Shown here piece after piece: positions 38,337 to 61,399 of a stretch of DNA of 64,000 bases. The stretch is taken from IMG/VR virus record IMGVR_UViG_3300031707_000001, positions 1 through 64,000 of that record; one strand, given 5' to 3'. Made by a program: the position numbers and the translations under genes. Each line of letters begins with the position of its first letter. Within the stretch, counting starts at the first letter, position 1. The notes under the pieces are model-generated. The model had not been told where the DNA came from and did no database searches. It saw only the letters and a program-made list of their open reading frames with translations.

Positions 38337-38410
38337 CGGAGCGTAGCCCAGTTGGCTAGGGCGTCTGGCCTGGGACCAGAAGGTCGGCAGTTCGAGTCTG
38401 CCCGCTCCGA
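38337..38410 (+). tRNA. tRNA-Pro(UGG), C33, no encoded CCA (CTA)
   Basis: C1-G72, A73, loop CC-TGG-GA. Confidence 0.85.
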
Positions 38411-38436
38411 CTACTCTAGGAGGTTATGAAAGCAGT

Positions 38437-39084
38437 ATGACATTAAAGCCATCAGAAGCGTTTGAAGATCCCGTCCGCTTTAAGAAGCTTACCGATCGAT
38501 GGAATCGGATTACCAATATCGGTGGGGTAACTGTAAACAAAGACGTTTCAGTTTCTGAGGTAGAAAAGCGGTACCTCAGAGTATTCGATGTCTATAAACA
38601 GTTCTACACCAAACGCTGGCGTCCGGCCTTTGATGCAGTTGTCAAAGCAAAGCAGGCCCACGCCAAGCCATCGCACAAACATACGTGTATGGGCAAGATC
38701 GAACCGGACGGTACGGTTTGTGAATGTTGGTGGTTGTATAAGGGTTACATCAACGATTGGGGTACATCAATTGGATTTGACTGGGTAGCAAAACCTAAGA
38801 AGCCAAAGAATTTGAAAGTTGGCCAGGCATACTACGATGTGGATCAACGTTCGAATATTGTGCATGGGCGTAAGCTTAGGTTTGGTGCTGTACTTGACAG
38901 CATGATCATTGGCGAACTGTACAAGCAATTACCACATCCGAATAAGTCTGGACCAAAGATCGTCAGGGTCATCGTCAACGATCGTGTTTACTGGTATCAG
39001 ACGATATCCTACCATCATGGTGGATTGATATGGTCAAGATTGGCCTGGCCGGAAGACGAATTGCAAGGAGTTGTATTGAAGTAA
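38437..39084 (+). CDS. Hypothetical protein
   Basis: 215 aa, AGGAGG upstream. Confidence 0.7.
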   Translation: MTLKPSEAFEDPVRFKKLTDRWNRITNIGGVTVNKDVSVSEVEKRYLRVFDVYKQFYTKRWRPAFDAVVKAKQAHAKPSHKHTCMGKIEPDGTVCECWWLYKGYINDWGTSIGFDWVAKPKKPKNLKVGQAYYDVDQRSNIVHGRKLRFGAVLDSMIIGELYKQLPHPNKSGPKIVRVIVNDRVYWYQTISYHHGGLIWSRLAWPEDELQGVVLK

Positions 39085-39094
39085 GAATGCCCAC

Positions 39095-39263
39095 GACTCC
39101 TCTTGATCCGTAGGAGCTTTGAAAAGGGTGAAATAAACGGATCCCTCTTCCCTTGCTCGGCCGCTGACAGGTCGGAGCACTTGGTCCCGTCGTGCAGTCC
39201 AAGTCAGAAAAAGCACGATCCCTGGTGGAGAGATCCCACCTGACAGCCGGGAACAGACCGGCC
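39095..39263 (+). ncRNA. Unknown double-pseudoknot ncRNA upstream of tRNA-His
   Basis: CTCCT/AGGAG with GATCCGT/ACGGATC; ACTTGG/CCAAGT with TCGTGC/GCACGA; terminal hairpins. Confidence 0.65.
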
Positions 39264-39270
39264 TATCGAC

Positions 39271-39346
39271 GCAGTTGTTGGTGCAGAGGTTAGCACGTCA
39301 GGCTGTGATCCTGAAAACATGGATTCGAATTCCATACAACTGACCA
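39271..39346 (+). tRNA. tRNA-His(GUG), G-1 opposite A73
   Basis: Loop CT-GTG-AT, CCA. Confidence 0.88.
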
Positions 39347-39361
39347 TTTCAAGGAGGAACT

Positions 39362-39721
39362 ATGGCTAAAGCAACGTCATGTGGGGTAAAGAAAAGACAT
39401 TTCAATTCAAACGGCGACTACCATCCTTTCATATGCGGGCGGTTGAAAGGGCATACTAACAAGCACGAATGTCATTGTGGCTGCGGACATCAATGGGGCA
39501 CAAACAAGCAGGGGAAGAACGTAAGACTCAGCAACAAAGAAAAGTGTATTATTGCATTTGTACAGGGAGCTCAATGGTGGGAGTTTTACAAAACAAAATT
39601 TACTATGTGGCAAAGTGATCGTAATTTGGCTTTAGCGGAAGCTACAAGGCGGGCAAAGGGCGGGTTGCTTGGAATAGTACCCATTGTTGAAAGAATTCAT
39701 CGAAATCGAAAGGAAGTATAG
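39362..39721 (+). CDS. Hypothetical protein
   Basis: AAGGAGG RBS. Confidence 0.6.
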   Translation: MAKATSCGVKKRHFNSNGDYHPFICGRLKGHTNKHECHCGCGHQWGTNKQGKNVRLSNKEKCIIAFVQGAQWWEFYKTKFTMWQSDRNLALAEATRRAKGGLLGIVPIVERIHRNRKEV

Positions 39722-39723
39722 CT

Positions 39724-40014
39724 ATGACCATATGGAAATATATCTTGAAGCCGACCTGTGAAATAGAGATGCCAACGGGTGCGCAGATTCTGAGTGTACA
39801 CGCACAACCTAACAAAGCACCACCGTTCAAACTTGACGGAGAAGAGATTTGTATTTGGGCGAAAGTGGAACCCGCAAATCCCAAAGAGACACGTAAGTTC
39901 GTTGTATTTGGGACAGGTCATCCTGTACCGTGTGAATTGCATATGCAGTTTTTGGGTACGGCATTGTTGCACGGCGGGCTATTTACCTATCACGTATTCG
40001 AGGTGTTGCCATGA
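39724..40014 (+). CDS. Conserved phage hypothetical protein
   Basis: TIWKY..MPTGAQILSVHAQ..VFGTGH..HVFE. Confidence 0.75.
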   Translation: MTIWKYILKPTCEIEMPTGAQILSVHAQPNKAPPFKLDGEEICIWAKVEPANPKETRKFVVFGTGHPVPCELHMQFLGTALLHGGLFTYHVFEVLP

Positions 40015-40147
40015 CCGAAAAAGAGATAGAGCAAGACAAGTATGCAGAGCTTATAATTTCTATGTGTACAGACTTCCTACTGAAGAAGCTGACGTGGGAA
40101 ACTGTAGTGAGCAACTTGAAGCTGATCATAACACAGATAGGTAAGCT

Positions 40148-40384
40148 ATGAAAACTGTACCAAATGATTGGGGACATCCCTGGATGGATTGGCCAGATTG
40201 GAAACATCGTGCTTGGATGAAACTACATCTTTACATTTTGGTTGAGGGTATTAAAGGTGGGGCAGGATTGACGGCCGAACAAAAAGGTTGTAAAGAAAGG
40301 GAAGCATTACGAACTGGAAGACCTCAATATGATGTAGCTCATTGTAATGAGTTAATCAGACGAGCCGATTCTATCGTTATATAG
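40148..40384 (+). CDS. Hypothetical protein
   Basis: 78 aa. Confidence 0.5.
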   Translation: MKTVPNDWGHPWMDWPDWKHRAWMKLHLYILVEGIKGGAGLTAEQKGCKEREALRTGRPQYDVAHCNELIRRADSIVI

Positions 40385-40392
40385 GTATAATT

Positions 40393-40659
40393 ATGAACCG
40401 CAAACAGGTTACACAGGGATCATTAGCAGAGGCAGAGCGCCTGGTTCGTCTCAACATGGAGACACAGCTGCGGCTTAAGGGATATGGAACGTTTGCTTCC
40501 AGGCATGAAATCCTGGGATCTGTAACGGAAGAATACCACGAACTTGTTGATGCAGTACACCGCAACGACATGTTCGATTGTGAAAAAGAGTTGGCAGATG
40601 TCGCCGTAGCTGCTATATTCGGGCTGGCATGTATTAAGGAAAAATCTTTGGATTGGTAG
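40393..40659 (+). CDS. Small MazG-like protein
   Basis: HEILGSVTEEYHEL..ELADVAVAA. Confidence 0.65.
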   Translation: MNRKQVTQGSLAEAERLVRLNMETQLRLKGYGTFASRHEILGSVTEEYHELVDAVHRNDMFDCEKELADVAVAAIFGLACIKEKSLDW

Positions 40660-40721
40660 GAGAATGATTATGAACTTCCGGAGGAACGCAGTCTTCTGAT
40701 ATACTAACATCAGGAGGCTGT

Positions 40722-41024
40722 ATGAGCAGAACGTATAGAGACGGTGTAGAGTGGCTGTACAAGTTGCACGGCCATTACTACGAACAACCCCCAGCTGGGA
40801 CGTCATGGCAAGACTGGGAGTCCTGGCGTGGGGTCCATCTGGCACGTATTGAGAACAGTCGGTGTCGGGATGGCAAGTTCAAGAACGGGCTAATGACCAG
40901 TCCTTCGGCGCCGTGGTTCAAAGTCATACGCCGGCGTGAGCGTCGGCATGCAGAGAACCAGGCGGTGTACCTGGGAAAAGAGCCGCCACGCTTCAAAAAG
41001 ACCGATCGTTGGGAGTGGTGGTAA
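40722..41024 (+). CDS. Hypothetical basic protein
   Basis: AGGAGG RBS. Confidence 0.6.
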   Translation: MSRTYRDGVEWLYKLHGHYYEQPPAGTSWQDWESWRGVHLARIENSRCRDGKFKNGLMTSPSAPWFKVIRRRERRHAENQAVYLGKEPPRFKKTDRWEWW

Positions 41025-41077
41025 AAGCCTTAATTCCTTAAGGAATTAGGGTATAACTAATGTAGAGAATTTCATAT

Positions 41078-41446
41078 GGGGCTGTCACGGTGTCGACTCA
41101 GGGATGAGCGAACCAGTAGCATGCCGTGCAATGCACAGTTGGGCACGTTAAAATCATCCTGTGTACAAGTAAGTGGTAACACACTGAAACTCGCTGCCTA
41201 GCAATAGGCAACTAGGAAACCGGGCGACTCCGATAGCCCGGGAGTACGACTATTCATCGGAAACCACAGGTGAGGCTGGACCCTGAGAATAATCCAGACC
41301 AGGTTGTCTGACCTGGTTGAAAAAACAGACTGGTGGACGTGCTAGGAAACTGGCGCCCCCTCGGTTGCTGGACCTAAACCAGATAAGCATGTAGTTGCTG
41401 TTAGCAAACTCTGAACACGGGAGTTCAACTCTCCCCAGCTCCACCA
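41078..41446 (+). ncRNA. ssrA: tmRNA; tag ORF 41175-41201 GNTLKLAA*
   Basis: GGGGCTG/CAGCTCC-A-CCA with G3.U70, T arm, GCATGC/GCATGT helix, GTAAGT resume context. Confidence 0.93.
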
Positions 41447-41452
41447 TTTTTT

Positions 41453-41761
41453 GAGGACAGTATTCGGTGAATGGATACCGATATAACTTGGGGTATCAAT
41501 CCTGTGACAAGTATCATTGTGGTTCTAGGTGCGTGTTTGTAGGATTCATGCCAAGCTATCCTGCATCATGTGGACTTAACTGCATTAGAGAAAGGACACA
41601 GTTAGGAAAGCCAAGTTGAACAATGTTATACGCCTTCAGGTAGGCGCTGGATAGGGTTATAAATAAGCAGGCACCGAATCCAGAAGCCACTGCGCAACGG
41701 ATTTCCAATCCTCAGCGTTGTTGACACCCGAAAGTTCCAGGTTCGATTCCTGGCTGTCCTC
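41453..41761 (+). ncRNA. Large tRNA-like RNA with a ~245-nt insert in place of the anticodon loop
   Basis: GAGGACAG/CTGTCCTC acceptor, CCAGG-TTCGATT-CCTGG T arm, TCGGT/ACCGA D-like arm, TTGGG/CCCGA stem. Confidence 0.65.
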
Positions 41762-42030
41762 ATTTCTCTTTTCAATCAACAGTGTAACAGTGATTGTCGG
41801 CGGCGTAAGGAAGACGGTTGTCAGGCTCAAAGAGCACAACACCGGTGTTGTAAAGACTACCACCCTTACGCCGCCGTTCGTTTTCAACAATCAACAAAGG
41901 AGGCTAAAATCAACAAAAACGACAAGCAGCACTTAAACTCACTCGGTGTTGCTTTTTCGTAATACTTAAGTAGTGAGTATGCAGATCAAGTGCTCAATGA
42001 CGCTAATATACATGCGTCTAGGAGTTACGG

Positions 42031-43125: not shown

Positions 43126-43134
43126 TAATCTGGG

Positions 43135-45879: not shown

Positions 45880-45955
45880 GGCGACTTAGCTCAGTTGGTA
45901 GAGCAGCAGACTGAAAATCTGCGTGTCTCCAGTTCGATTCTGGAAGTCGCCACCA
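45880..45955 (+). tRNA. tRNA-Phe(GAA)
   Basis: Loop CT-GAA-AA, CCA. Confidence 0.95.
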
Positions 45956-45982
45956 GGATCTTTGACAATTGAATTAGGTGAA

Positions 45983-46056
45983 GCGTGGTTGGCCTAATGG
46001 TTGGGTCCCAGCCTTCCAAGCTGGCTACGTGAGTTCGATCCTCACACCACGCTCCA
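45983..46056 (+). tRNA. tRNA-Gly(UCC)
   Basis: Loop CT-TCC-AA, U73, CCA. Confidence 0.92.
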
Positions 46057-46062
46057 TTGTTC

Positions 46063-46120
46063 GGGGTGGTAGCCTAATGGACAGGGCAACAGTCCTCTAA
46101 ACTGTTTTGTGCGGGTTCGA
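46063..46120 (+). pseudogene. tRNA-Arg(UCU) truncated in the T loop
   Basis: D and anticodon arms intact (CC-TCT-AA); ends at GCGGGTTCGA with no complementary 3' part. Confidence 0.7.
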
Positions 46121-46257
46121 CGGAACGATCGTGAAATCCCTGTTTTGCAGGATAGACAACGTACTGTAAGTGTCAACGGTTGCATACCCAGACGGCCGGC
46201 ATGTCTAGGTGGAGTGGTTCGATTCCACAGGTACACGGAACGTTCGTGAAATCCCTG
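46120..46257 (+). repeat. 23-bp direct repeat (46120-46142, 46235-46257) flanking a degenerate tRNA-like unit
   Basis: ACGGAACG(A/T)TCGTGAAATCCCTG twice; inner unit has a GTGG-TTCGATT-CCAC T arm. Confidence 0.7.
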
Positions 46258-46271
46258 CTTTATTCGTTTTT

Positions 46272-46403
46272 GACATGCGACGTGCGTATTGTTCGCACTA
46301 TGACTTGGTGAACGTGCTAGCCAACGTTCCCGTATGTGTACTGCCTACAGGCCAATAACCTGTTGAACCAGCAGAGCCAGCTCTGACAACCTGGCCGCAT
46401 GTC
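46272..46403 (+). ncRNA. Multibranch structured RNA
   Basis: GACATGCG/CGCATGTC closes hairpins GTGCG/CGCAC, GAACGT/ACGTTC, ACAGG/CCTGT, CAGAGC/GCTCTG. Confidence 0.5.
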
Positions 46404-46408
46404 TCTAT

Positions 46409-46484
46409 GGAGGTGTAGCTCAGTTGATAGAGCAGCCGGCTCTTAACCGGCGGGTCGTGGGTTTGAATCCCTCCACCTCTACCA
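46409..46484 (+). tRNA. tRNA-Lys(CUU)
   Basis: Loop CT-CTT-AA, CCA. Confidence 0.9.
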
Positions 46485-46512
46485 TTTCGTTAACGTCAAC
46501 AAAAAGGAAAAG

Positions 46513-46723
46513 TATGAGTCCGTTTAGCTATTATTTGATTACGTTGTTGAGTGAGGCAACACTCATTCGAGTGGCGTTGAAGACAGACGTAGACGTTGAG
46601 TTTTACATGGAACCGGAAGGTATAGCACAGCTTTTGGCTTTGCTTCCTCCACACGTACGAAGCATTGGTCCAATTGTAGACGTTGAAGAGATATTTGACG
46701 TCGTAGACGCAACAGTGAAGTAA
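46513..46723 (+). CDS. Hypothetical protein
   Basis: AAGGA RBS. Confidence 0.5.
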
Positions 46724-46756
46724 ATACAGTGAAACAGTAGAAAGGATAGTGTTGGT

Positions 46757-47839
46757 ATGAAGAAAGAATCGAAAGATATTATGATCTCGTTCGACACGAC
46801 AGGGAGCATGTACCCCTGTCTGACCCAAGTGCGGCGCAACGTATCCGCCTTGGTAACCCGGTTGTTCAAGGACATTCCGGACCTGCGAATCGGTATTATT
46901 GCTCACGGTGACTACTGTGACAAGAATCTGACGTACATTACGAAGATGCTGGATCTGACCAACGACAAGGATAAGATCGTCCATTTCGTAAACAACGTGG
47001 AAGCTACAGGGGGTGGAGATTCCCCGGAGTGCTACGAGTTTGTGTTGAACCAGGTACGTACGCTGGCTTCCTGGTCAAGTGGCAAGTCGAAGATCCTGAT
47101 CATGATTGGTGACGATGTGGCGCATAGCCCAAGGGAAACGCAGAACTTCAAGAAGCTGGAATGGCAGAACGAGATCGGCCTGATCAAAGAAGCAGGTATC
47201 AAGGTCTATGCCGTGCAGGCGCTGGGACGCAGCCATGCAACCAGTTTCTGGCGTACAATGGCATTTAAGTCGAACGGCTACTACATCACGCTGAATCAGT
47301 TTGCGGACATTCAGCACATGATCACAGCGGCTGGCTACAAGCAGCGGGGTGACAGTTTCCTGCAGGACTATGAAAAGGAACTGATTACCAATGGTGTGAT
47401 GAACCGGGACCTGGATTCAGCGATCGGTACCATGTTGGGACGAGAAACAAGTTCCAGGTTCAAGGTCAGTCGTACTCGCTTGGGTGCTGTGGACAGTGGA
47501 CGTTTTCAGGTTATGGAAGTGGACGAAAGATGTCCCATCAAGGAATTTGTGGAAGCACAAGGTGTTACATTCAAGGTAGGACGTGGATTCTATGAGTTCA
47601 CGAAGTCATCGGTTATTCAGCACTATAAGGAAGTAATCCTGATGGATAACCGGACTGGTGACCTGTTCAGTGGAGACAAAGCCCGGGAGCTGGCTAACAT
47701 TCCGATCGGGGTAACAGCCAAGCTGGGCCCGACACTGGTACCTGGCTACACAGTATTTGTGCAGTCAACATCATATAACCGGGCGCTCATGCCAGGAACG
47801 AAGTTCCTGTACGAGATTCCGGATTGGGAACGAGTTTAG
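46757..47839 (+). CDS. von Willebrand factor A domain protein
   Basis: FDTTGSM (MIDAS), GDYCD, GGGDSPECYE, IGDD. Confidence 0.85.
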   Translation: MKKESKDIMISFDTTGSMYPCLTQVRRNVSALVTRLFKDIPDLRIGIIAHGDYCDKNLTYITKMLDLTNDKDKIVHFVNNVEATGGGDSPECYEFVLNQVRTLASWSSGKSKILIMIGDDVAHSPRETQNFKKLEWQNEIGLIKEAGIKVYAVQALGRSHATSFWRTMAFKSNGYYITLNQFADIQHMITAAGYKQRGDSFLQDYEKELITNGVMNRDLDSAIGTMLGRETSSRFKVSRTRLGAVDSGRFQVMEVDERCPIKEFVEAQGVTFKVGRGFYEFTKSSVIQHYKEVILMDNRTGDLFSGDKARELANIPIGVTAKLGPTLVPGYTVFVQSTSYNRALMPGTKFLYEIPDWERV

Positions 47840-47842
47840 ATT

Positions 47843-48148
47843 ATGACACTTGACGAGATGAAGGCTTTGTTTGAAAAATACAGTAGTGGTGAAAGCATCG
47901 AATACGTAGCATTCAAACGAGTTAAGAATCCGAAGTGTAAACGTCCTGATATTTGTGCGTTTATTCGTTTGGACGAACTCGTTTCGGGAAAAGCGTACAT
48001 GGTGTCAGCAGCCGAACACGACGAAATCTTTTTAGACGTAGACGTGGAAGAGTTGGCTGCCGTAGTTACAGAAGAGGACATTGTCATGCTGCTACGTTGT
48101 GGAGTACGCTATGACAGTAGCGTGGACTCGTTGGCTATGTTCGTATGA
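47843..48148 (+). CDS. Conserved phage hypothetical protein
   Basis: RPDICAF..SAAEHDEI..LLRCGV. Confidence 0.7.
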   Translation: MTLDEMKALFEKYSSGESIEYVAFKRVKNPKCKRPDICAFIRLDELVSGKAYMVSAAEHDEIFLDVDVEELAAVVTEEDIVMLLRCGVRYDSSVDSLAMFV

Positions 48149-48297
48149 TTTGAATTTGTGGCCTGGGGACATCCCACGCAAAGTGACGTCCGAGTGTGGC
48201 CGGTTGAATAGCCGGCGTGAAGCCTACGGATACGTATGGGTTCATTGGCACTAACCTGGGCCTTATACAACAACCGAAGAAGAAAGAGGAAACGAAA

Positions 48298-48903
48298 ATG
48301 AGCAAAGGATCGATAGTTAGTTTGGGTATCGTGGGTGTTATTGTTTTGCTGCTAATCTGTATCATCTCCTGGTTCATCGGTGTGAAGAATGGAGAAATTA
48401 CGTTGGCTAATCGGTATGAGGCACAGTTCAACGTGGTGGAAACCACACTGGATACCATGCGCAAAACGATCATGAATCAGACCAAGTGTACCCGGGAATG
48501 GGCAGAGAAGTTCATTGCCGTGGTCATGGCACAGGCAGCTGGCAGATCCGGTGTAGTAGCCGGTGGTGCTGAAGCAGGCCCAAATGCCAAGAATGCGGCT
48601 GTAGCGGCCGCTGTAGGGTCAGGGGGTCTAGGTATCAACGTCAGCAGGGAATCGGAGGCGCTAGGCCTAACGCCGGCCCTCTATCAGCAGCTGGCTAATA
48701 GCATCGAAGGGAAACTGGCCGAATTCAAACGGTCCCAGGACACCCTTACGGACATATGGCAGACGCATAAGACGTTCTGTCAGAAGTTCCCGGCCAGCCT
48801 GGTAGTAGGCGACAAAGTGAAGCCCAAGCCCAGGATGATTACATCCGAGGATACGAAGGCTGCAGTGGCCACGGGAGTCATCAGCGACGATCTGATGAAA
48901 TGA
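48298..48903 (+). CDS. Membrane-anchored protein (LemA-like topology)
   Basis: N-terminal TM followed by helical domain; GAGG RBS. Confidence 0.65.
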   Translation: MSKGSIVSLGIVGVIVLLLICIISWFIGVKNGEITLANRYEAQFNVVETTLDTMRKTIMNQTKCTREWAEKFIAVVMAQAAGRSGVVAGGAEAGPNAKNAAVAAAVGSGGLGINVSRESEALGLTPALYQQLANSIEGKLAEFKRSQDTLTDIWQTHKTFCQKFPASLVVGDKVKPKPRMITSEDTKAAVATGVISDDLMK

Positions 48904-48904
48904 T

Positions 48905-50065
48905 ATGTTTCTAGCAATTACAACATTGCTTCCGGCAATCGCCATAGTGGGGATCCTGGCATCCCCACTATGGTGTGTTACTATAGGCCGAGACATGGAT
49001 CAGTATTTGGCTCGGAAGAAATTGCTGATCTTCAGCTTGGCTTCGTTTGTTATGTCCGCTTGCGTGTCCGGAGCGCTTTATGGCTTTGCAGCCATGAGCA
49101 TCATGGATAAGGAAGTATGGCACTTCAAGATCTTTACGATCCGACACGAAGAAGAATGGACGACGCACGAGACTCGGACGGAAACATATACCACAGGCAG
49201 CGGTAAGCATCAAACCACGCATACAAAGACAGTGCACTATACAGAAAACCACGGACCATATTGGACAGCTATAGACGAGCGTAGTAGCGAACATAGGATT
49301 GACTCGTCCGAGTACGATAAGTGGTCCAAGGTATGGGGAAATCAGCTTCAAACGGGCGTGCACAAAGGCAGTTCAGCAGGCTGGGATCGTTCGATAACTG
49401 GCAAGATCTTTGAATGCAAGTGGACCAGAGACTTTGAACGGATTTATCCGTGGGACGAGATACATCACTACAAGAACAAGGTGCGGCATTGCAGTTCTGT
49501 TCTGAAGTACAGGGAACCTACCAAGGAACTAGAAAAGCTGTATCCACGGCCGGCTGAGTCGGGTGACTGTTCACCCGTGTTGTGTTACGGTGCTTCCCTT
49601 GGAGCAGCTGATATACAGCGATTGCGACAGGTTAACGCAGAGTTGGGTCCCAAGTACCTGGTGCATACGCTTTTAGTATTGTTCGGAAAGGATGCAGATC
49701 GTTCGAAGATTGACGATATCCTGAGTGCTTGGAGGAGCGTCAACAAGAATGAATTGGTAACCTTCTTGGCTCTGGATGGTGGATCCACCGTAAGATGGTG
49801 TGAGGTCCAAAGTTGGATGGACGATACTACGATCCATGCTACGTTAAGGGATGCCTTGGTAGCTGAACCGTTTACGGCCAGGCGATATTCCGACCTGTTG
49901 ATGCAGTACGTGCCGAAGCAGTGGAAGAAAAAGAACTTCCACGATTTCGACTATCTGCGGGTTGAAATACCGATAGGATGGAAGGTGATAGCAATACTGG
50001 TCGTGATTGGTGGATTGGTAGGCATCTTTGTTGTTGTAGACCAAAAAGTAACGTTGTCATGGTAA
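48905..50065 (+). CDS. Multi-TM membrane protein
   Basis: Two N-terminal and one C-terminal hydrophobic helices. Confidence 0.75.
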   Translation: MFLAITTLLPAIAIVGILASPLWCVTIGRDMDQYLARKKLLIFSLASFVMSACVSGALYGFAAMSIMDKEVWHFKIFTIRHEEEWTTHETRTETYTTGSGKHQTTHTKTVHYTENHGPYWTAIDERSSEHRIDSSEYDKWSKVWGNQLQTGVHKGSSAGWDRSITGKIFECKWTRDFERIYPWDEIHHYKNKVRHCSSVLKYREPTKELEKLYPRPAESGDCSPVLCYGASLGAADIQRLRQVNAELGPKYLVHTLLVLFGKDADRSKIDDILSAWRSVNKNELVTFLALDGGSTVRWCEVQSWMDDTTIHATLRDALVAEPFTARRYSDLLMQYVPKQWKKKNFHDFDYLRVEIPIGWKVIAILVVIGGLVGIFVVVDQKVTLSW

Positions 50066-50073
50066 GGAGGCGT

Positions 50074-50556
50074 ATGTTCGCACGTAGTCAGTCTATCAAA
50101 AGGTATGTGGCAGAACACTCTCCGAAGAGTTTTGCCAGGCGGATTGAAAGCCGCAATCGAAAACTTCTGAATGCGTTGTTGAAAATAGGTCCGAAAGTGA
50201 CGACCTATACGCATGTGTGGATAAACAACGGATGTCCTCATTGCAATGAGTACAATTGCCAAAGATGCCTGTGGACAACTGCTGCAGAGAAATTTGCACT
50301 TGACGAGACAACAGGCTGTTCAGATTGTTGTGACACGGAATTTGGTGGAGTATCTTATTGTGATGTGACTGGGGAAGATACTCAATATTATTGGGTTGAG
50401 TATAAGGATTGCGGAGCATCCTTGCATACAAGAGATACTCGTGACCTGCGGCAAGGTTGCCCAACTCCAAAAGAGGAATACGACAATCTTGTGGCCTTTT
50501 TGAAAGGGCATATTGCCTGGGCACAATGGGAATGCTGGGGAAAGAAATACAAATAG
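50074..50556 (+). CDS. Hypothetical protein
   Basis: AAGGAGG RBS; stop overlaps tRNA-Val. Confidence 0.65.
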   Translation: MFARSQSIKRYVAEHSPKSFARRIESRNRKLLNALLKIGPKVTTYTHVWINNGCPHCNEYNCQRCLWTTAAEKFALDETTGCSDCCDTEFGGVSYCDVTGEDTQYYWVEYKDCGASLHTRDTRDLRQGCPTPKEEYDNLVAFLKGHIAWAQWECWGKKYK

Positions 50557-50630
50557 GCGGTTAACTCAGTTGGTAGAGTGTCAGATCTACACTCTGAATG
50601 TCACAGGTTCAAGTCCTGTACCGCCTACCA
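50555..50630 (+). tRNA. tRNA-Val(UAC), C33
   Basis: Loop TC-TAC-AC, A73, CCA. Confidence 0.88.
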
Positions 50631-50631
50631 T

Positions 50632-50708
50632 GTGCCTGTAGCTCAATTGGACAGAGCATCTGACTACGGATCAGAAGGTTGCAGGTTCGATTCCTGCCAG
50701 GCACGCCA
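50632..50708 (+). tRNA. tRNA-Arg(ACG)
   Basis: Loop CT-ACG-GA, CCA. Confidence 0.95.
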
Positions 50709-52244: not shown

Positions 52245-52460
52245 ATGGCGTACAAGTTCAATAATGGAACAGGCGCTGTGATTTGTGATCACTGCGGCAT
52301 TACGATTGACGAAGGTCTTAGCTACACGGAATACGAAGAATGTTATGGAAGCGAGCAGAAGAAGGACTACTGCACCAGATGCTTCCACCCGGCAAACCGA
52401 CAGAAAGTTAAGGAGGAATCCGATGGCGAGCGATTTGATAGTGCCCGTTGTGAAGCTTGA
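52245..52460 (+). CDS. Hypothetical Zn-ribbon protein
   Basis: KFNNGTGAVICDHC. Confidence 0.6.
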   Translation: MAYKFNNGTGAVICDHCGITIDEGLSYTEYEECYGSEQKKDYCTRCFHPANRQKVKEESDGERFDSARCEA

Positions 52461-53547
52461 ACAGTTGAGACCTCACCCCAATGCTGACAAGTTGGAGTTG
52501 GTCAACGTATTGGGATACCAGATGTGTGTGCCCAAAGGATTGCACAAGGATGGCGACGTCATGGTGTACTTCCCTGCGGATACACTTATTCCGGCTACGT
52601 GGGCGGATTCTTTTGGCGTACGCAAGTACCTGAAGGGTAAGGATCAGGATCGTGTCGGCCGAATCAAGCTGCGGGGTGAGCCTTCGTTTGGACTGGTAGT
52701 CCAGCCGCCTAAGCTACCTGCTGATGTAAAATTCAATGTTGGCGACAATGTGGCTGACTACTATGGTGCCAAGAAGTACGAGCCGCCGGTTCGTGCTACT
52801 GCCGGCGATGCTGCTGCCCGGGATCCTTTGATCGATCCATTCTTTGAGCAGTTCACGGACGTGCAGAACGGACGTATGTTTACGGATATCTTCGTTGATG
52901 GCGAGGAAGTCATCTGCACGGAGAAGATCCACGGTACCAACTGCAAGGTTGGATGTATTGATGGTAAGCCTGTGGCTGGATCTATGGGCGTACGCAGAAA
53001 GCGTCCAACAAAATTATTTGAAGGTCAGGAAATTCCTTGTAAACTAACTGATGATGCAATTGCTACAAACACCTATTGGTTTCCGTTTAGCCTTCCTGGT
53101 GTTAGAAGCCTCATGTCTGACTTTGCAGAACAGGAAATCAAAGAGCCTGTACTGCTCTACGGAGAAGTATATGGTGGTAGTATACAGAGTCTGGACTACG
53201 GTATACCTAAAGGTAAGGGCTTGGGCTTTCGAGCATTTGGACTCAAAGTCAATGGTAGGTTTTTGGACTGGGACGTTTTCGCAGATACATGTATAAAATA
53301 TGGTGTTAAGATGGTTCCAGTTCTTGGGCGTGGCCCTTTCAGTATGGAGAAGGCCAAACACTATGCAGACGGAACATCTGTTCTTTGGACCGATGCGGGA
53401 GTTAAGGTAGAACATATGCGTGAAGGTTGTGTAATCTATCCGGTCAAGGAACGTGAACACCCGAAGATCGGGCGGGTCATCCTAAAGTATATCGGAACCG
53501 AGTATGAGCTTAGCAAACACAAAGAACAAGACACAAAGGACGTTTGA
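52423..53547 (+). CDS. RNA ligase, DRB0094 family
   Basis: N-terminal OB-like HPNADKLE; motif I TEKIHGTN, YGEVYG, REGCVI, LKYI. Confidence 0.9.
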   Translation: MASDLIVPVVKLEQLRPHPNADKLELVNVLGYQMCVPKGLHKDGDVMVYFPADTLIPATWADSFGVRKYLKGKDQDRVGRIKLRGEPSFGLVVQPPKLPADVKFNVGDNVADYYGAKKYEPPVRATAGDAAARDPLIDPFFEQFTDVQNGRMFTDIFVDGEEVICTEKIHGTNCKVGCIDGKPVAGSMGVRRKRPTKLFEGQEIPCKLTDDAIATNTYWFPFSLPGVRSLMSDFAEQEIKEPVLLYGEVYGGSIQSLDYGIPKGKGLGFRAFGLKVNGRFLDWDVFADTCIKYGVKMVPVLGRGPFSMEKAKHYADGTSVLWTDAGVKVEHMREGCVIYPVKEREHPKIGRVILKYIGTEYELSKHKEQDTKDV

Positions 53548-54718: not shown

Positions 54719-54780
54719 GGGTGCGTAGCTCAGTGGTAGAGCCATGGAAACCGTGGGTTCGAATCCCGCCGCATCCACCG
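54719..54780 (+). ncRNA. Anticodon-less tRNA-Ala-like RNA
   Basis: GGGTGCG/CGCATCC (G3.U70), A73, canonical D and T arms joined by about 9 nt; ends CCG. Confidence 0.75.
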
Positions 54781-55682: not shown

Positions 55683-56375
55683 ATGATCATTGTTGCTGGA
55701 GATATACACGGGGATTTTGGAAGCTTGAATGCCATGATAAACAAGCAGAATCCAGAGATCATTTTGCAATGTGGAGATTTCGGATTTTGGCCCGCTATGC
55801 GTCCACAGGACTTCTACGGACCTACCGGCCACAAAAATGCCAAGCTTCCAATTCCCAGGGTGGGTAAGACCAAGGTATACTGGTGCGATGGAAACCACGA
55901 GGATCATCATTCGTTGATTGCACGTAAGACCAACGAGTTGTGGCCTAACGTATTCTATCAGCCTAGGGCTTCCACACTGCAACTGCCGGACGGTCGCACA
56001 GTGTTGTTTATGGGTGGCGCCGATTCCTACGACAAACCGTATCGGACTCCGAACATAGATTGGTTCCAGGAAGAACTGATTACTCAGGCCGATATGGATC
56101 GGTTGCCCAAGTGCAAAGTGGACATCGTTATAAGTCATACCTGCCCTTGTGAGTTTGTAATGGGAATGGGGCTTGGTTTTGATCTACGGCTTAACGATCC
56201 ATGCCGGCACGCATTGTCTATGATTCTACACGAATACAAGCCAGCGCTCTGGTACTTTGGGCATTGGCACAAAAACATAACATATTACGATAGCGAATGG
56301 GGTTGTCGGTGGACGGCATTAAGCCATACAACCGGCGGAGGGTCTGGCCGCTGGTGGGAGGAACTACGAACATGA
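55683..56375 (+). CDS. Calcineurin-like metallophosphoesterase
   Basis: GDIHG, GDFG, GNHE, SHT and GHWH motifs. Confidence 0.88.
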   Translation: MIIVAGDIHGDFGSLNAMINKQNPEIILQCGDFGFWPAMRPQDFYGPTGHKNAKLPIPRVGKTKVYWCDGNHEDHHSLIARKTNELWPNVFYQPRASTLQLPDGRTVLFMGGADSYDKPYRTPNIDWFQEELITQADMDRLPKCKVDIVISHTCPCEFVMGMGLGFDLRLNDPCRHALSMILHEYKPALWYFGHWHKNITYYDSEWGCRWTALSHTTGGGSGRWWEELRT

Positions 56376-57419: not shown

Positions 57420-57664
57420 TCGCTGAAATGTGTCAGAGAAAATTGGACAAGACACCTTTACAGGAACCAGAGAAGAGTCCTTTCTTTTCCTGGTGGTGTG
57501 AAGTGCTTAGTGTTTACGACGAAGATGCCATGGACAGATTCTCACTAAGAGATATTGCGGACATGGCATTTGCAGCTGGTCAGAACTATCAGAAGGCGCT
57601 ACAATACGAACCCAAAGTCAATAAAAAGGAGGCCCAAGATGCCACAGTTTGCGGTACTCACTGA
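57389..57664 (+). CDS. Hypothetical protein
   Basis: GAGGAG RBS. Confidence 0.5.
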   Translation: MSFEAGPFGMIAEMCQRKLDKTPLQEPEKSPFFSWWCEVLSVYDEDAMDRFSLRDIADMAFAAGQNYQKALQYEPKVNKKEAQDATVCGTH

Positions 57665-57818
57665 AGATGGTGTTGACGATAAGCGGTATGATTCAATCGA
57701 CGAAGCAACAGATGCAGCCAAAGCAGCCGTCGAGGATCCGGATACGGAAGTGGAGATTGTCCAGATATTGAGGAAGGTTTCTTCGACTCTGGAAATCACA
57801 GTAGAAGACGTGGCGTAG
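57639..57818 (+). CDS. Small acidic hypothetical protein
   Basis: AAGGAGG before ATG; MPQFAVLTE. Confidence 0.55.
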   Translation: MPQFAVLTEDGVDDKRYDSIDEATDAAKAAVEDPDTEVEIVQILRKVSSTLEITVEDVA

Positions 57819-57833
57819 ACAAGATTTGCATGC

Positions 57834-57862
57834 TTGACAAGTCTCAGTAACTCCACTAATAT
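57834..57862 (+). promoter_or_regulatory. Sigma70 promoter of HNH gene (leaderless)
   Basis: TTGACA-N17-TAATAT, ATG 6 nt downstream. Confidence 0.75.
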
Positions 57863-57868
57863 GGTGGC

Positions 57869-58426
57869 ATGAAGATAAAGAGTATTGTTGCCAACGATGG
57901 ACAAAAGCGAAAGCATGCACTAATACGTTGCCACTATTGCCATAAATATTTTTGGAAATCAATACACTTAATGAAACAGAGTATAAATCATTTCTGCTCT
58001 GTTGTGTGTAGTCGTTTAGGACACCGTAAGCGAAAGAAATTCAAATGTGCCTTTTGTGGCGAACAAGGTGAGAAGCCACTTCAAAAATTTTCTAAAAGTA
58101 AATCGAAGCTACATTTTTGTTCTCGGCGATGCAAGGATTTAGGCCAAAGTATAACTTATGGCTTAGAAAAAATGTGGCCTAAGCACTACAATAGAAATGG
58201 CGGGAGTGTAGATTTTTATCGTAGGCTTGCATGGCACAGTTATAAGCACTACTGCGCAGGTTGTGGCTATGATAAAATACCTGAAATTCTAGAGGTGCAC
58301 CATATCGATCGAAATAGAAAAAATAATAAAGTAGAGAATCTAATACTCCTTTGTTCCACCTGTCATACGATAATTACACTCGGTTACGGTAAACTGGTAA
58401 ATCGTAAACTTGTTATGGGGCAGTAG
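57869..58426 (+). CDS. HNH endonuclease with Zn fingers
   Basis: FCSxxC twice; CAGCG..LEVHHIDRNRKNN..NLILLCSTCH. Confidence 0.9.
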   Translation: MKIKSIVANDGQKRKHALIRCHYCHKYFWKSIHLMKQSINHFCSVVCSRLGHRKRKKFKCAFCGEQGEKPLQKFSKSKSKLHFCSRRCKDLGQSITYGLEKMWPKHYNRNGGSVDFYRRLAWHSYKHYCAGCGYDKIPEILEVHHIDRNRKNNKVENLILLCSTCHTIITLGYGKLVNRKLVMGQ

Positions 58427-58492
58427 CCAAATGGCCACGGCGACAGACCTGCAATCTGTTTTTTCGGAGTTCGATTCTCCGCTGCTCCACCA
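58417..58492 (+). tRNA. tRNA-Ala(UGC), C33
   Basis: G3.U70, A73, loop CC-TGC-AA, CCA. Confidence 0.9.
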
Positions 58493-58527
58493 ACTTTCAA
58501 ACAAAAGCCAAAACAAGGAGATGCGGT

Positions 58528-59274
58528 ATGGGTAAGTTATGCGAAGTGTTAGCGGTAGAAGGTGAATTGGACTCGACCTGCAAGGCAGTCCTGGAAGAAG
58601 CGACGAAGACGTTCAAAGATAAGGCTGCTCACTTTGTGGGTCAGACTAAAACCTACGAACCCTTCGAAGAAGGTACGCCAGGGTTGCCCGAAGAACACCT
58701 GGCCATGGTCACAACGGTAAACGAGAAGCTGGCCTACGTGTTTGAACACCTGGTCAAGCTGATTGATGCCAAGGCCCAGAAGGACGCTACAAATCAGGTA
58801 GCCAAGGCCGACATCGTGACGGATAGCGGAACGTTGGCTACGGGTGTGCCGGCCACGACATTGTTGGGGTTGGAAGCAACCCTGCGTCAGGTGAAGGCAT
58901 TGGCGCTGGAAGTGCCCACGTTGCCTCCAGGCATCGAATGGAAGAAGGATCCTGCCTTGGGCAAGGACATCTATCATCGGGTACATCCCGCCGTGACGTT
59001 CAAGACCCGTAAGACCTTCCGACACAAAGTGCTGGTGGAGCCCACCAAGGAACACCCTGCTCAGATCGAAAAGTGGAGCGAGGACGAGAACATCGGCAAG
59101 TTTATCACAGATGCATGGTCAGGCATGTTGACGCCGGCCGAGAAGAGTGATATGATTGGCCGCATTGATACGTTGGCTCGGGCTGTGAAAGAGGCCCGGC
59201 AGCGTGCCAATACAACCGAAGTTGTGAAGATCAAGCTGGCGAAGAGTCTGATGGACTACATTCTGCCGGCATAA
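58528..59274 (+). CDS. Conserved hypothetical protein (family I recognise from bacteria and phage; function unknown)
   Basis: KLCEVLAVE..TYEP..KDATNQVAKADI..LLGLE..HPAQIE..WSG..AVKEARQRAN. Confidence 0.8.
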   Translation: MGKLCEVLAVEGELDSTCKAVLEEATKTFKDKAAHFVGQTKTYEPFEEGTPGLPEEHLAMVTTVNEKLAYVFEHLVKLIDAKAQKDATNQVAKADIVTDSGTLATGVPATTLLGLEATLRQVKALALEVPTLPPGIEWKKDPALGKDIYHRVHPAVTFKTRKTFRHKVLVEPTKEHPAQIEKWSEDENIGKFITDAWSGMLTPAEKSDMIGRIDTLARAVKEARQRANTTEVVKIKLAKSLMDYILPA

Positions 59275-59382
59275 TGCTTTTGGGTAGACTTATCCTTATC
59301 GTTATGTTCTGATCGTGCTCCCGACTAAGTCTCGGAAAGAGCGATCAGATATCATCGTTATCGTTATAGTTTTGCCCAAGCA
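59275..59382 (+). ncRNA. Structured RNA with hexamer repeats in a symmetric internal loop
   Basis: TTGGGTAGAC/GTTTTGCCCAA; TCTGATCG/CGATCAGA; TTATCS/ATCGTT units on both loop strands. Confidence 0.65.
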
Positions 59383-59415
59383 ACCTCAGGCGGATGCGTC
59401 ATCCGACAAGGCGGG

Positions 59416-59548
59416 TGCAGGTTCTAATTTAATGTGCGTCGTGGGTTCAATTCCCACTCCGGTCTCCTTCGTACACAAGCCGGGTATTGTGTTCGAAGAG
59501 ACCGGGTAGCTCAGTGGTAGAGCACACAGATTCAACATGAAGCCTGCA
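59416..59548 (+). ncRNA. Circularly permuted tRNA-like RNA (T arm, closed acceptor, then D arm)
   Basis: GTGGG-TTCAATT-CCCAC, TCCGGTC/GACCGGG, TA-GCTC-AGTGGTA-GAGC, TGTG/CACA, TGCAGG/CCTGCA. Confidence 0.78.
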
Positions 59549-59630
59549 ATTCCAGCTCAAGGAGACGAGGAGCCAAATGGATTGTATCCTATGAAGCCTT
59601 CGGGCTGATTAGAAAACATGAAATATCATT

Positions 59631-59668
59631 GGGGGCCCAGATTGGGAATTGATCTGGGCCCCTATTTT
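59631..59668 (+). terminator. Rho-independent terminator
   Basis: GGGGCCCAGAT/ATCTGGGCCCC followed by TATTTT. Confidence 0.75.
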
Positions 59669-59673
59669 ACACT

Positions 59674-59759
59674 GCCGGAGTGCCTCAGTGGCGACAGGAC
59701 GGGTTTTGTAAACCCGCACATAAGAAACATCGGGAGTTCGAGTCTCTCCTCCGGCTCCA
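59674..59759 (+). tRNA. tRNA-Thr(UGU) with 15-nt variable region
   Basis: Loop TT-TGT-AA, V region CACATAAGAAACATC, CCA. Confidence 0.85.
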
Positions 59760-59781
59760 TTAATGGTAGAGCATTTACCGT

Positions 59782-59810
59782 TTGACAATAGGTCTACCTT
59801 ATGCAATAGT
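59782..59810 (+). promoter_or_regulatory. Sigma70-like promoter of HNH gene (leaderless)
   Basis: TTGACA-N17-AATAGT, ATG 6 nt downstream. Confidence 0.6.
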
Positions 59811-59816
59811 ATTGAC

Positions 59817-60239
59817 ATGAGTAGATCATCACGTTTTAGAATCTGTTCTGTATGCCACAAATCTTATCATGCGTGGGCTAAGGTAGCACTATACTGTTCA
59901 AATGCATGTCAATGGGAACAAGATTACCAAAAACGAATTTTGATTGTTCGAAAGACGCATAATTGGTTTGATGGTTGGCAGAGCTGCACGTCTATTCGAA
60001 ATGCTTTACATAGAGAACGAGGTATACGTTGTGAGATTTGCGGTGGTACAAAGTGGCAGGGAAAACCAATGCCAGTAGTGATGGACCATATTGATGGAAA
60101 TTCGGACAATTGGGTAGATTCTAACTTGCGGCTCGTATGCGGGAACTGTGATATGCAATTGCCTACGTATAAAAATAAGAACAAGGGCAAGGGTCGACAT
60201 AGTCGACGTTTACGCTATCAGCAAGGAAAGTCTTACTAG
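59817..60239 (+). CDS. HNH endonuclease
   Basis: YCSNAC; CEICG..MDHIDGNSDN..NLRLVCGNC. Confidence 0.9.
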   Translation: MSRSSRFRICSVCHKSYHAWAKVALYCSNACQWEQDYQKRILIVRKTHNWFDGWQSCTSIRNALHRERGIRCEICGGTKWQGKPMPVVMDHIDGNSDNWVDSNLRLVCGNCDMQLPTYKNKNKGKGRHSRRLRYQQGKSY

Positions 60240-60480
60240 CTTACCGTTGTAGTTTACAGTGATACGAATTCATAATCCACGAGCACAAATACCATTCCAC
60301 GATAAGTTGGATCACTGGTTGGGTAGATAAAAGTTTGTGTATGAATTCGTTAGAGTTTAATTACCTTAATTGGCTCCAGTTTACAACATAGCCTGTGGTG
60401 AAAGATCCGTTACGAGGTGGACGGGCATGAAAACTTAGGAGTAACCACAGGTTATAAAATCAACAAGGAAGGTCCTACTT

Positions 60481-60672
60481 ATGAGTGAACCTAAAACGAT
60501 ACATATGGAAGATGTACATTCCATCAGCTTGGAAGCAATGAGTATTGTGGAAACCAGGCTGCGTGAATTCGGCATCACATTGACACCTGAGCAAGACGAC
60601 GAAATTTACATACCACTGGATAACACCATAGAAAAATTCGCCGGATATCCGGACTTTGCCCACGAACACTAA
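60481..60672 (+). CDS. Hypothetical protein
   Basis: 63 aa, AAGGAAGG upstream. Confidence 0.55.
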   Translation: MSEPKTIHMEDVHSISLEAMSIVETRLREFGITLTPEQDDEIYIPLDNTIEKFAGYPDFAHEH

Positions 60673-60694
60673 ACCTCAAAACGAAGGAACGAAA

Positions 60695-61333
60695 ATGGCC
60701 GAGAATACAGACGTGACGAAGAACATCGAACTGAAGGCAAATCTGACATTGACGAAGGACGAGATCATCGAACGGATCGTCGATGCGGAGTTGGAACCGT
60801 TGCAGGCAGCAGCAGACAAACTACGTTTGGCGATCGATATTACTCATGCAAAGGTGTGTAAGGCAGAACACATCTTTTGTGAAAATCATGACAAGATGGT
60901 AAGACCTGATCCTCGGAGCTTTTTGAGTGACGAGCAGCAAAAGGCATACGATGCTTTTGTTAAGGCATTCGGCGGACTAGGTAAAGTCACATACGCACTC
61001 GGACTGCCTACATATGAGGTTTGTAATGGAAAACTGCACATAGTGGTGTCAATGCATAATTACAAAACTAGTTGTGTGGATATATTGGTAGATTTATGGT
61101 GCGGTCTACCGGCTGACCTAAAAGAATCTTATGACAACATGCAGAAGGCCAGAGAGGATGCCCAGGTAGCAAATCTTGAATACCAGTGTGCAGCTTCCAA
61201 ATGTGACAGGGAAGGCAAAGCCCGACTTCACAAGGCGATTAAGAATCGCATGATCGACAATCTCTTCAAAGAGATCAATGGTTCGCTGAAGAAGCTTCTG
61301 GCCCTGCCGGAAGATACAGAGAAGCCGGCGTAG
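60695..61333 (+). CDS. Hypothetical coiled-coil protein
   Basis: AAGGA RBS; stop lies inside tRNA-Thr. Confidence 0.7.
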   Translation: MAENTDVTKNIELKANLTLTKDEIIERIVDAELEPLQAAADKLRLAIDITHAKVCKAEHIFCENHDKMVRPDPRSFLSDEQQKAYDAFVKAFGGLGKVTYALGLPTYEVCNGKLHIVVSMHNYKTSCVDILVDLWCGLPADLKESYDNMQKAREDAQVANLEYQCAASKCDREGKARLHKAIKNRMIDNLFKEINGSLKKLLALPEDTEKPA

Positions 61334-61399
61334 CTCAATCGGAAGAGCAGCTGATCCGTAATCAGCCGGTTGTCGGTTCGACCCCGGCCGCCGGCTCCA
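61324..61399 (+). tRNA. tRNA-Thr(CGU), C33
   Basis: Loop TC-CGT-AA, CCA. Confidence 0.88.

What the first reader, a model, noticed from the sequence alone, without database searches (positions are those of the whole stretch)
38337..61399. U33-to-C in five tRNA anticodon loops
Seen: Pro CC-TGG-GA (38337), Arg CC-TCT-AA (46063, truncated), Val TC-TAC-AC (50555), Ala CC-TGC-AA (58417) and Thr TC-CGT-AA (61324). Established: U33 is near-invariant (U-turn), and phage tRNAs are known to carry anticodon-loop changes that escape anticodon nucleases. Inference: a systematic evasion of a nuclease or modification enzyme that reads U33-N34, or C-to-U editing.
Basis: partly seen in the sequence, partly recalled or inferred. 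Interest (0 to 1): 0.62.

Follow-up and report, generated by a model that had tools for sequence, protein, structure and literature searches.

The report
Phage tRNAs with C at position 33
A 211-kb uncultured sediment phage carries four intact tRNA genes (Pro, Val, Ala, Thr) and one broken one (Arg) in which the almost universal U before the anticodon is a C; this is real, far above chance, shared with its nearest relative and seen in some unrelated phages, but why is still an inference.

Summary
ARAGORN and Infernal both place C at position 33 in tRNA-Pro(UGG), Val(UAC), Ala(UGC) and Thr(CGU). A fifth case, Arg(UCU) at 46063, is a 5' fragment cut off in the T loop.

The window is the first 64 kb of a complete 210.7-kb jumbo phage from sediment metagenomes, with 27 tRNAs and a tmRNA. 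An independent sample's contigs reproduce the two sites I could check. The four genes score 58-67 bits, keep their synthetase identity elements, and are the phage's only Pro, Val and Ala tRNAs.

The same pipeline gave these C33 rates:
- bacteria: 1/222
- viral contigs: 37/947 (3.9%; 1.8% below 50% GC)
- this phage: 4/27
- its nearest relative: 4/26

In these two phages the deviation is specific to position 33 (8/53, against 8/370 at seven other near-invariant positions). The Val orthologues keep C33 across compensatory stem changes.

Among phages C33 is biased by isotype (Val, Ala, Glu, Ile, Thr, Pro) and clustered in a few genomes. One unrelated 65%-GC phage has nearly the same isotype set.

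Best reading: these are functional tRNAs in which C33 removes a feature read by a host tRNA-directed enzyme. This is inferred, not shown. Near-neutral tolerance is a strong rival. Editing has no support.

The parts
38337..38411 (+). tRNA-Pro(UGG), loop CCTGGGA, C33 at 38370. It lies 2 nt after tRNA-Leu(CAA). C1:G72 and A73 are kept. The 3' end reads A-CTA, so no CCA is encoded.
   Evidence: (63.3 bits)
46063..46120 (+). 5' fragment of tRNA-Arg(UCU), loop CCTCTAA, C33 at 46095. It is broken in the T loop and followed by tRNA debris and a 27-nt direct repeat (46120-46146 / 46235-46261).
   Evidence: contigs of X1 and X3 identical
50555..50630 (+). tRNA-Val(UAC), loop TCTACAC, C33 at 50587. tRNA-Arg(ACG) follows 1 nt later. 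A73 is kept. The orthologue in G001 has the identical loop with compensatory stem changes.
   Evidence: (67.3 bits)
58417..58492 (+). tRNA-Ala(UGC), loop CCTGCAA, C33 at 58449. G3:U70 is kept. An HNH endonuclease gene abuts its 5' end.
   Evidence: (58.1 bits)
61324..61399 (+). tRNA-Thr(CGU), loop TCCGTAA, C33 at 61356. G1:C72 and C2:G71 are kept.
   Evidence: 59.1 bits
17551..63874 (+). The phage's whole tRNA region: 27 tRNAs for 19 amino acids (no Met found), a tmRNA (41078-41446), tRNA-like RNAs and tRNA fragments, all on the + strand, interspersed with small ORFs.
52285..53547 (+). RNA ligase (PF09414 with a PHA02142 OB domain; phrog_968) inside the tRNA region. It is a candidate sealing enzyme for tRNA repair.
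55683..56375 (+). Calcineurin-like metallophosphoesterase (PF00149). It could be the end-healing partner of the ligase; this is inference.
57869..58426 (+). HNH endonuclease next to tRNA-Ala. A second HNH-motif protein lies at 59763-60239 next to tRNA-Thr, with homologues beside tRNAs in G001 and two other viral contigs.

Best explanation
The four intact C33 genes are working phage tRNAs. A pyrimidine at 33 is enough for them to decode. In this phage lineage C33 is kept, in certain isoacceptors, because it removes a feature (U33) that a host tRNA-directed enzyme reads. That enzyme could be an anticodon-loop nuclease, or a modification enzyme whose product marks the tRNA for attack. The phage's own Pro, Val, Ala and Thr(ACG) decoding would then survive when the host's U33 tRNAs are hit, with the RNA ligase and phosphoesterase as a second line of defence. 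Shown: the C33 is real, enriched, specific to position 33, conserved in Val, and biased by isotype, and the genes are intact. Inferred: that they are expressed and charged, that a U33-dependent host factor exists, and that C33 blocks it.
For: (1) The genes are intact. They score 58-67 bits with no non-canonical pairs in the anticodon arm. G3:U70 in Ala, C1:G72/A73 in Pro, G1:C72/C2:G71 in Thr and A73 in Val can be read directly from the sequences. Pro and Val sit 1-2 nt from U33 tRNAs, so they are probably co-transcribed. They are the only phage tRNAs for Pro, Val and Ala. (2) Specificity: in G000+G001, position 33 deviates in 8/53 tRNAs, against 8/370 at U8, G53, T54, T55, C56, A58 and C61 (p=2e-4). 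(3) Enrichment: Fisher p=0.0024 for the window and 3e-5 for both phages against viral loci below 50% GC. (4) The Val orthologues are 83% identical, with two compensatory pair changes in the anticodon stem, others in the acceptor stem, and an identical TCTACAC loop. (5) The replacement is almost always C, not a purine (37 C, 3 A, 1 G), so function is being preserved. (6) C33 is biased by isotype (permutation p=6e-4) and clustered by genome (p=2e-4). The unrelated 65%-GC phage G008 has C33 in Arg, Ala, Ile, Val, Pro, Thr and Leu, which includes all five of the window's amino acids (chance about 0.0014, post hoc). (7) Precedent: phage tRNA substitutions defeat AriB and are proposed to defeat VapC, and E. 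coli TsaBCDE cannot put t6A on U33C tRNA. (8) An RNA ligase and a metallophosphoesterase lie in the tRNA region.
Against: No nuclease is known to require U33, and those I could check do not. The host and its tRNAs and defences are unknown. Position 33 differs between G000 and G001 in 4 of 23 same-anticodon pairs (Pro, Ala, Thr-UGU, Glu), about as often as an average site, which fits neutrality as well as an arms race. Phage tRNAs in general deviate about 4% at every near-invariant position, and C33 rises with GC (1.8% below 50%, 10.8% above 60%), which points to a share of mutation pressure plus weak constraint. The t6A argument covers only ANN-reading tRNAs. There are no expression, charging or modification data. 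The background survey is small and not corrected for relatedness.
Confidence: 0.4

Rival explanations
1. Near-neutral tolerance. U33 to C costs little in certain isoacceptors, and phage tRNAs are under weaker purifying selection than cellular ones, so position 33 drifts between the two pyrimidines in some lineages with no defence-related role.
For: Viral tRNAs deviate at all near-invariant positions at about 4-5% (33: 24/490; others: 137/3405). There are 4 C/U flips in 23 orthologous pairs between G000 and G001. C33 frequency rises with GC. An isotype bias could reflect where C33 is structurally tolerated. Farther relatives (17 tRNAs) and the cultured kin Arash and Vibrio D69 are almost all U33, so the state is young.
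Against: In G000 and G001 the other invariant positions are well kept (2%) while position 33 is at 15%. The window is 48% GC, where the background is 1.8%. C32 does not follow GC. Val C33 survives across compensatory stem evolution. Two unrelated phages converge on the same amino-acid set.
Confidence: 0.35
2. The encoded C33 is deaminated to U33 after transcription (C-to-U editing), so the mature tRNAs are canonical.
For: None directly. Editing of C to U in tRNA exists elsewhere (archaeal position 8, trypanosome position 32); this is from my own knowledge.
Against: No cytidine or dCMP deaminase domain (PF00383) is present in the complete phage genome. No bacterial enzyme editing position 33 is known to me. 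C33 occurs in phages of very different GC content and therefore different hosts. No RNA run holds this phage.
Confidence: 0.04
3. The C33 genes are inactive pseudogenes or non-decoding decoys.
For: The Arg-UCU copy is truncated. The region holds other tRNA debris and tRNA-like RNAs. tRNA-Pro lacks an encoded CCA.
Against: The four intact genes have high covariance-model scores, intact stems and identity elements, and no other invariant-position deviation (0 of 4). They fill otherwise empty amino-acid slots. Compensatory changes in Val show selection on structure.
Confidence: 0.06
4. Sequencing or assembly error.
For: None.
Against: A 63x contig and an independent sample's contigs are identical over the Arg fragment and Val. 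The same state recurs in G001 and other phages.
Confidence: 0.01

Closest known systems
Nuclease-escape tRNAs of phages (T5 tRNA-Lys, Thr and Asn against PARIS AriB; T5 tRNA-Tyr against retron PtuAB; cluster C1 mycobacteriophage tRNAs against VapC)
   Same: They are phage-encoded near-complete tRNA sets with substitutions in the anticodon arm relative to the cellular norm. They lie interspersed with HNH endonucleases and tRNA-like RNAs, as in T5. RNA repair genes are nearby.
   Different: The described escape changes lie at positions 32, 37-41 or in the stem. None is at the universal U33, and T5 has 0 C33 in 22 tRNAs. No cognate nuclease is known here.
Initiator tRNA-Met of multicellular eukaryotes (natural C33)
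   Same: It is a functional tRNA with C33. There C33 acts as an anti-determinant for bacterial and yeast t6A enzymes (PMC8887486).
   Different: It is an initiator that acts in the P site, with a CAU anticodon. Here the tRNAs are elongators for Pro, Val, Ala and Thr in a bacterial virus.
T4 Pnkp/Rnl1 tRNA repair against PrrC
   Same: An RNA ligase and a phosphoesterase are encoded among the tRNA genes, which suggests the phage expects tRNA breakage.
   Different: The ligase is of the PF09414 (Rnl2/DNA-ligase-like) type with an OB domain. No polynucleotide kinase was found in the ORFs scanned, and no link to C33 is shown.

Membership tests
Canonical elongator tRNA (Rfam RF00005) | Cloverleaf with a 7-nt anticodon loop and 5-bp anticodon stem, scoring above the gathering threshold | tested here: met
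   58.1-67.3 bits against a 29-bit cut-off, full-length alignment. ARAGORN agrees.
Canonical elongator tRNA (Rfam RF00005) | U at position 33 | tested here: not met
   C at 38370, 50587, 58449 and 61356
Canonical elongator tRNA (Rfam RF00005) | Other near-invariant nucleotides (U8, G53, T54, T55, C56, A58, C61) and synthetase identity elements | tested here: met
   0 of 4 C33 tRNAs deviate at these positions. G3:U70 (Ala), C1:G72/A73 (Pro), G1:C72/C2:G71 (Thr) and A73 (Val) were read.
Phage nuclease-escape tRNAs | Phage-encoded, and differing from the host's isoacceptor at a nuclease determinant | not testable with these tools
   The phage origin is shown. The host is unknown, so no host tRNA can be compared.
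Phage nuclease-escape tRNAs | Resistance to a defined tRNA nuclease, and rescue of infection | not testable with these tools
   This needs cleavage and plaque assays. The nucleases with published position-33 or loop data do not depend on U33.
C-to-U edited tRNAs | A deaminase able to act on the tRNA, and U in the mature RNA | tested here: not met
   No PF00383 domain in the complete genome. The mature RNA is not testable because there are no RNA runs.
tRNA pseudogene | Truncation, broken stems or a sub-threshold score | tested here: not met
   Not met for Pro, Val, Ala and Thr. Met for the Arg-UCU fragment at 46063-46120.
Eukaryote-type C33 initiator tRNA | CAU anticodon and initiator features | tested here: not met
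   The anticodons are UGG, UAC, UGC and CGU.

The most novel reading that the evidence does not exclude
C33 defines a convergently evolved class of 'protected' phage tRNAs. Unrelated tRNA-rich phages replace U33 in the same few isoacceptor families (Val, Ala, Thr, Pro, Ile, Glu, Arg-AGR) because a widespread, still undescribed tRNA-directed activity reads U33 in exactly those tRNAs. That activity could be a host defence, or the phage's own nuclease for depleting host tRNAs. The phage copies would be immune to it while still decoding.
Probability: 0.25. Interest if true: 0.8.

Novelty: new variant of a known kind. Interest (0 to 1): 0.55.

Why it matters
U33 is among the most conserved nucleotides in biology. 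Here it is replaced in about 15% of the tRNAs of two related phages and about 4% of phage tRNAs overall, in a repeatable subset of isoacceptors. That gives natural material to ask what U33 is needed for beyond the U-turn. It also gives a concrete handle for finding tRNA-targeting defences or modification checkpoints that read the 5' side of the anticodon loop. I found no paper describing C33 in phage tRNAs. If it proves to be neutral tolerance, it still sets a useful limit on how strict the U33 requirement is in bacterial translation.

Tried and rejected
- **Assembly error:** rejected for Val and the Arg fragment.
- **GC mutation pressure:** it contributes to the phage-wide rate but cannot explain a 48%-GC genome.
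- **General decay of phage tRNAs:** rejected for this clade, because the other invariant positions are kept.
- **Insertion splitting tRNA-Arg(UCU):** no matching 3' half lies within 3 kb. The alignment to G001's intact Arg-UCU stops at the T loop.
- **Close relatives:** megablast of 12 kb against cultured phages found nothing. DUF7873 and a Val-tRNA pattern in IMG/VR found only G001. The metagenome scan added only the same phage and U33-bearing distant kin.
- **C33-rich background contigs as relatives of this phage:** they are not.
- **Link of C33 to C32, A37 or A38 context:** not significant.
- **Link to the cmo5U34 family boxes:** three of the four in the window, but not upheld in the background (my reading).
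- **Phage-encoded enzymes:** no CCA-adding enzyme, TROVE/Ro60 or deaminase.
- **Shared proteins between G000 and G008:** only an AAA fragment and a dNMP kinase.
Full report
**What the window is**

The window is the first 64 kb of a single 210,732-bp virus record with direct terminal repeats, rated 100% complete. It encodes a multisubunit RNA polymerase beta-like protein, a tail-sheath-like protein, a family-A DNA polymerase and an SbcC-like protein. It has no near relative among cultured phages. The nearest cultured phages, by RNA polymerase at about 30% identity, are Salmonella phage Arash and some Vibrio phages. Public runs that hold it are sediment metagenomes. All its tRNA genes lie in the window on the + strand between 17.5 and 63.9 kb: 27 tRNAs for 19 amino acids (no Met was detected) plus a tmRNA. 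They are interspersed with small ORFs, two HNH endonucleases, an RNA ligase, a metallophosphoesterase, an AAA ATPase and a vWA protein. The layout resembles the tRNA region of T5.

ARAGORN and Infernal alignments to RF00005 agree on the anticodon loops:
- Pro-UGG: CCTGGGA
- Val-UAC: TCTACAC
- Ala-UGC: CCTGCAA
- Thr-CGU: TCCGTAA

Each loop is closed by a perfect 5-bp stem, so position 33 is C at 38370, 50587, 58449 and 61356. The other 23 tRNAs have U33.

The Arg-UCU element at 46063 has the loop CCTCTAA, but it stops resembling a tRNA after the first five bases of the T loop. No caller reports it, and no matching 3' half lies nearby. It sits in a patch of tRNA debris with a 27-nt direct repeat. 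It is a truncated pseudogene that carried C33 when it broke.

**Not an artefact**

A 63x contig of run X1 (the likely source) covers 45898-50681 without a difference. Contigs of the independent sample X3 cover the Arg fragment and Val without a difference.

**The genes look functional**

- They score 58-67 bits against a 29-bit threshold.
- None deviates at U8, G53, T54, T55, C56, A58 or C61.
- The synthetase identity elements are present: G3:U70 in Ala, C1:G72 with A73 in Pro, G1:C72 and C2:G71 in Thr, and A73 in Val (read).
- Pro follows Leu-CAA by 2 nt, and Val precedes Arg-ACG by 1 nt, so they are probably made from the same precursors as U33 tRNAs.
- They are the phage's only tRNAs for Pro, Val and Ala.
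- Pro lacks an encoded CCA, and the phage has no PF01743 enzyme, so it would rely on the host's.

**Background rates**

I sampled tRNAs in the same way from different collections: seed on a T-arm pattern, then run ARAGORN on the fetched flanks.

| Source | C33 / tRNAs |
|---|---|
| Bacterial and archaeal contigs | 1/222 |
| Viral contigs, two seeds, 172 loci | 37/947 (3.9%), plus 3 A and 1 G |
| Viral loci below 50% GC | 12/666 (1.8%) |
| Viral loci above 60% GC | 14/130 (10.8%) |
| T5 | 0/22 |
| Vibrio phage D69 | 0/22 |
| Salmonella phage Arash | 1/24 |
| This phage (48% GC) | 4/27 |

The fraction of C at position 32 does not change with GC. Against the background below 50% GC, the window gives Fisher p=0.0024.

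**The relative**

The closest record is G001, a 208.9-kb IMG/VR contig (RNA polymerase 68% identical, 52% GC in the part read). It has 26 tRNAs, of which 4 have C33: Val-UAC, Glu-UUC, Met-CAU and Thr-UGU. Both phages together give p=3e-5 against the GC-matched background.

The two Val genes are 83% identical. They show compensatory changes in the anticodon stem (tcaga/tctga against ccagg/cctgg) and in the acceptor stem, and the seven-base loop is identical. This shows selection on structure with C33 retained.

Pro, Ala, Thr-UGU and Glu differ at position 33 between the two phages, so 4 of 23 same-anticodon pairs are discordant. More distant kin found through a DUF2828-type protein carry 17 tRNAs, all with U33, including a Val-UAC.

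**Is it general decay?**

In viral contigs at large, every near-invariant position deviates at about 4-5% (position 33: 24/490; seven others: 137/3405). Bacteria are at 0-2%. So part of the phage-wide C33 rate may simply reflect looser constraint. In G000 and G001 the picture differs: 8/53 at position 33 against 8/370 elsewhere (odds ratio 8, p=2e-4). C33 tRNAs are no more deviant elsewhere than U33 ones.

**Patterns across phages (exploratory, not corrected for relatedness)**

C33 is unevenly spread over isotypes (permutation p=6e-4):
- Val 6/28, Ala 4/31, Glu 6/51, Ile 4/47, Thr 4/61, Pro 2/47
- None in 225 tRNAs for Gln, Phe, Tyr, Cys, Gly, His and Asp

C33 is also clustered in a few genomes (p=2e-4). 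One of these, G008, is a 108-kb contig of 65% GC that shares only two weak protein matches with this phage. It has C33 in 7 of 28 tRNAs: Arg-CCU, Ala-CGC, Ile-GAU, Val-UAC, Pro-CGG, Thr-CGU and Leu-CAA. That set contains all five amino acids affected in the window (chance about 0.0014 if sets were random; this is post hoc).

**Mechanism**

What is shown stops at the genes. From the literature:
- Phage tRNAs do carry anticodon-arm substitutions that defeat tRNA nucleases.
- The bacterial t6A37 enzyme set TsaBCDE cannot modify a U33C tRNA. Thr-CGU, and formerly Arg-UCU, would therefore probably lack t6A.
- The nucleases for which I could find data do not need U33. Gamma-toxin cuts U33C normally, AriB cuts between 40 and 41, and LbuCas13a reads U35.

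I therefore commit, at 0.4, to this reading: these are functional tRNAs in which C33 is kept because it removes a recognition feature for a host tRNA-directed enzyme, with the RNA ligase and phosphoesterase as a repair back-up. The main rival, at 0.35, is that C33 is a nearly neutral pyrimidine swap tolerated in certain isoacceptors. Editing back to U has no support: there is no deaminase and no RNA data.

**Comparison and novelty**

It works like the known escape tRNAs of T5 and the mycobacteriophages. Membership in that class cannot be tested without the host and a nuclease. The position affected, the near-universal U33, is not among the described escape positions. Four literature searches found no account of C33 in phage tRNAs. 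I rate it a new variant of a known kind, of moderate to good interest.

**Limits**

- The host is unknown.
- There is only one close relative.
- The background samples are small, seeded on T-arm patterns and not phylogenetically corrected.
- Three of the five sites were not checked against reads.
- The standard genetic code was used throughout.
- The large protein searches were not needed.

Noticed in passing
window 63643-63759 and 63763-63874: Two adjacent tRNA-like genes have intact acceptor, D and T arms and CCA, but each carries a 42-45-nt insert in the anticodon arm. The inserts share a hairpin (GTACAG..TGTAT..CTG..CTACAG) with a covarying stem. Removing 63671-63712 from the first leaves a perfect stem-loop with loop CTTATAA (Ile-UAU-like). 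The second would keep only a GGAA-capped hairpin. The motif occurs nowhere else in this genome or in the G001 parts read. It could be a small intron or a new tRNA-like RNA.
   Followed up: partly
window 59415-59552: A sub-threshold match to YrlA (bacterial Y RNA-like, RF02553; 35.3 bits, E=4e-4) has the permuted T-arm / closed acceptor stem / D-arm layout. A DUF7873 gene lies just upstream (58528-59274). A DUF2828+DUF7788 protein with a vWA-like DxSGSM motif follows the tRNA region at genome 64545-66149. No TROVE domain is present in the genome.
   Followed up: partly
window 54719-54780: A 62-nt mini tRNA-like element has acceptor, D and T arms but no anticodon arm, and ends ACCG. It is matched by both the tRNA model (48.4 bits) and the ends of the tmRNA model. 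T5 has annotated 'tRNA-like stable RNAs' in its tRNA region.
   Followed up: no
window 35955-35982 and 46160-46262: There are orphan tRNA pieces: a 3' end (T loop, acceptor strand, CCA) 89% like that of tRNA-Leu(UAA), and a degenerate tRNA-like stretch between two copies of a 27-nt direct repeat next to the broken Arg-UCU. A variant contig in run X5 has small indels at 46231-46236. These suggest rapid gain and loss of tRNA genes, perhaps through the neighbouring HNH endonucleases.
   Followed up: partly
window 41078-41446: A phage-encoded tmRNA (82.7 bits) has the predicted tag GNTLKLAA. No tRNA-Met of any kind was detected in this phage, whereas its relative G001 has two.
   Followed up: no
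G008 (IMGVR_UViG_3300003321_000691), loci L403-L408, about 93.2-102.5 kb: An unrelated 65%-GC viral contig has 7 C33 tRNAs out of 28: Arg-CCU, Ala-CGC, Ile-GAU, Val-UAC, Pro-CGG, Thr-CGU and Leu-CAA. It also has two tandem tRNA-Ile(AAU)-like genes with G32. Other C33-rich loci are L106 (4/36), L083 (3/30) and L153 (3/24).
   Followed up: partly
window 32380-32455: There is a tRNA-Ile with a UAU anticodon, rather than the usual lysidine-dependent CAU type, and ATA makes up 24% of Ile codons in the phage's long ORFs. The phage may decode AUA without the host's TilS.
   Followed up: no
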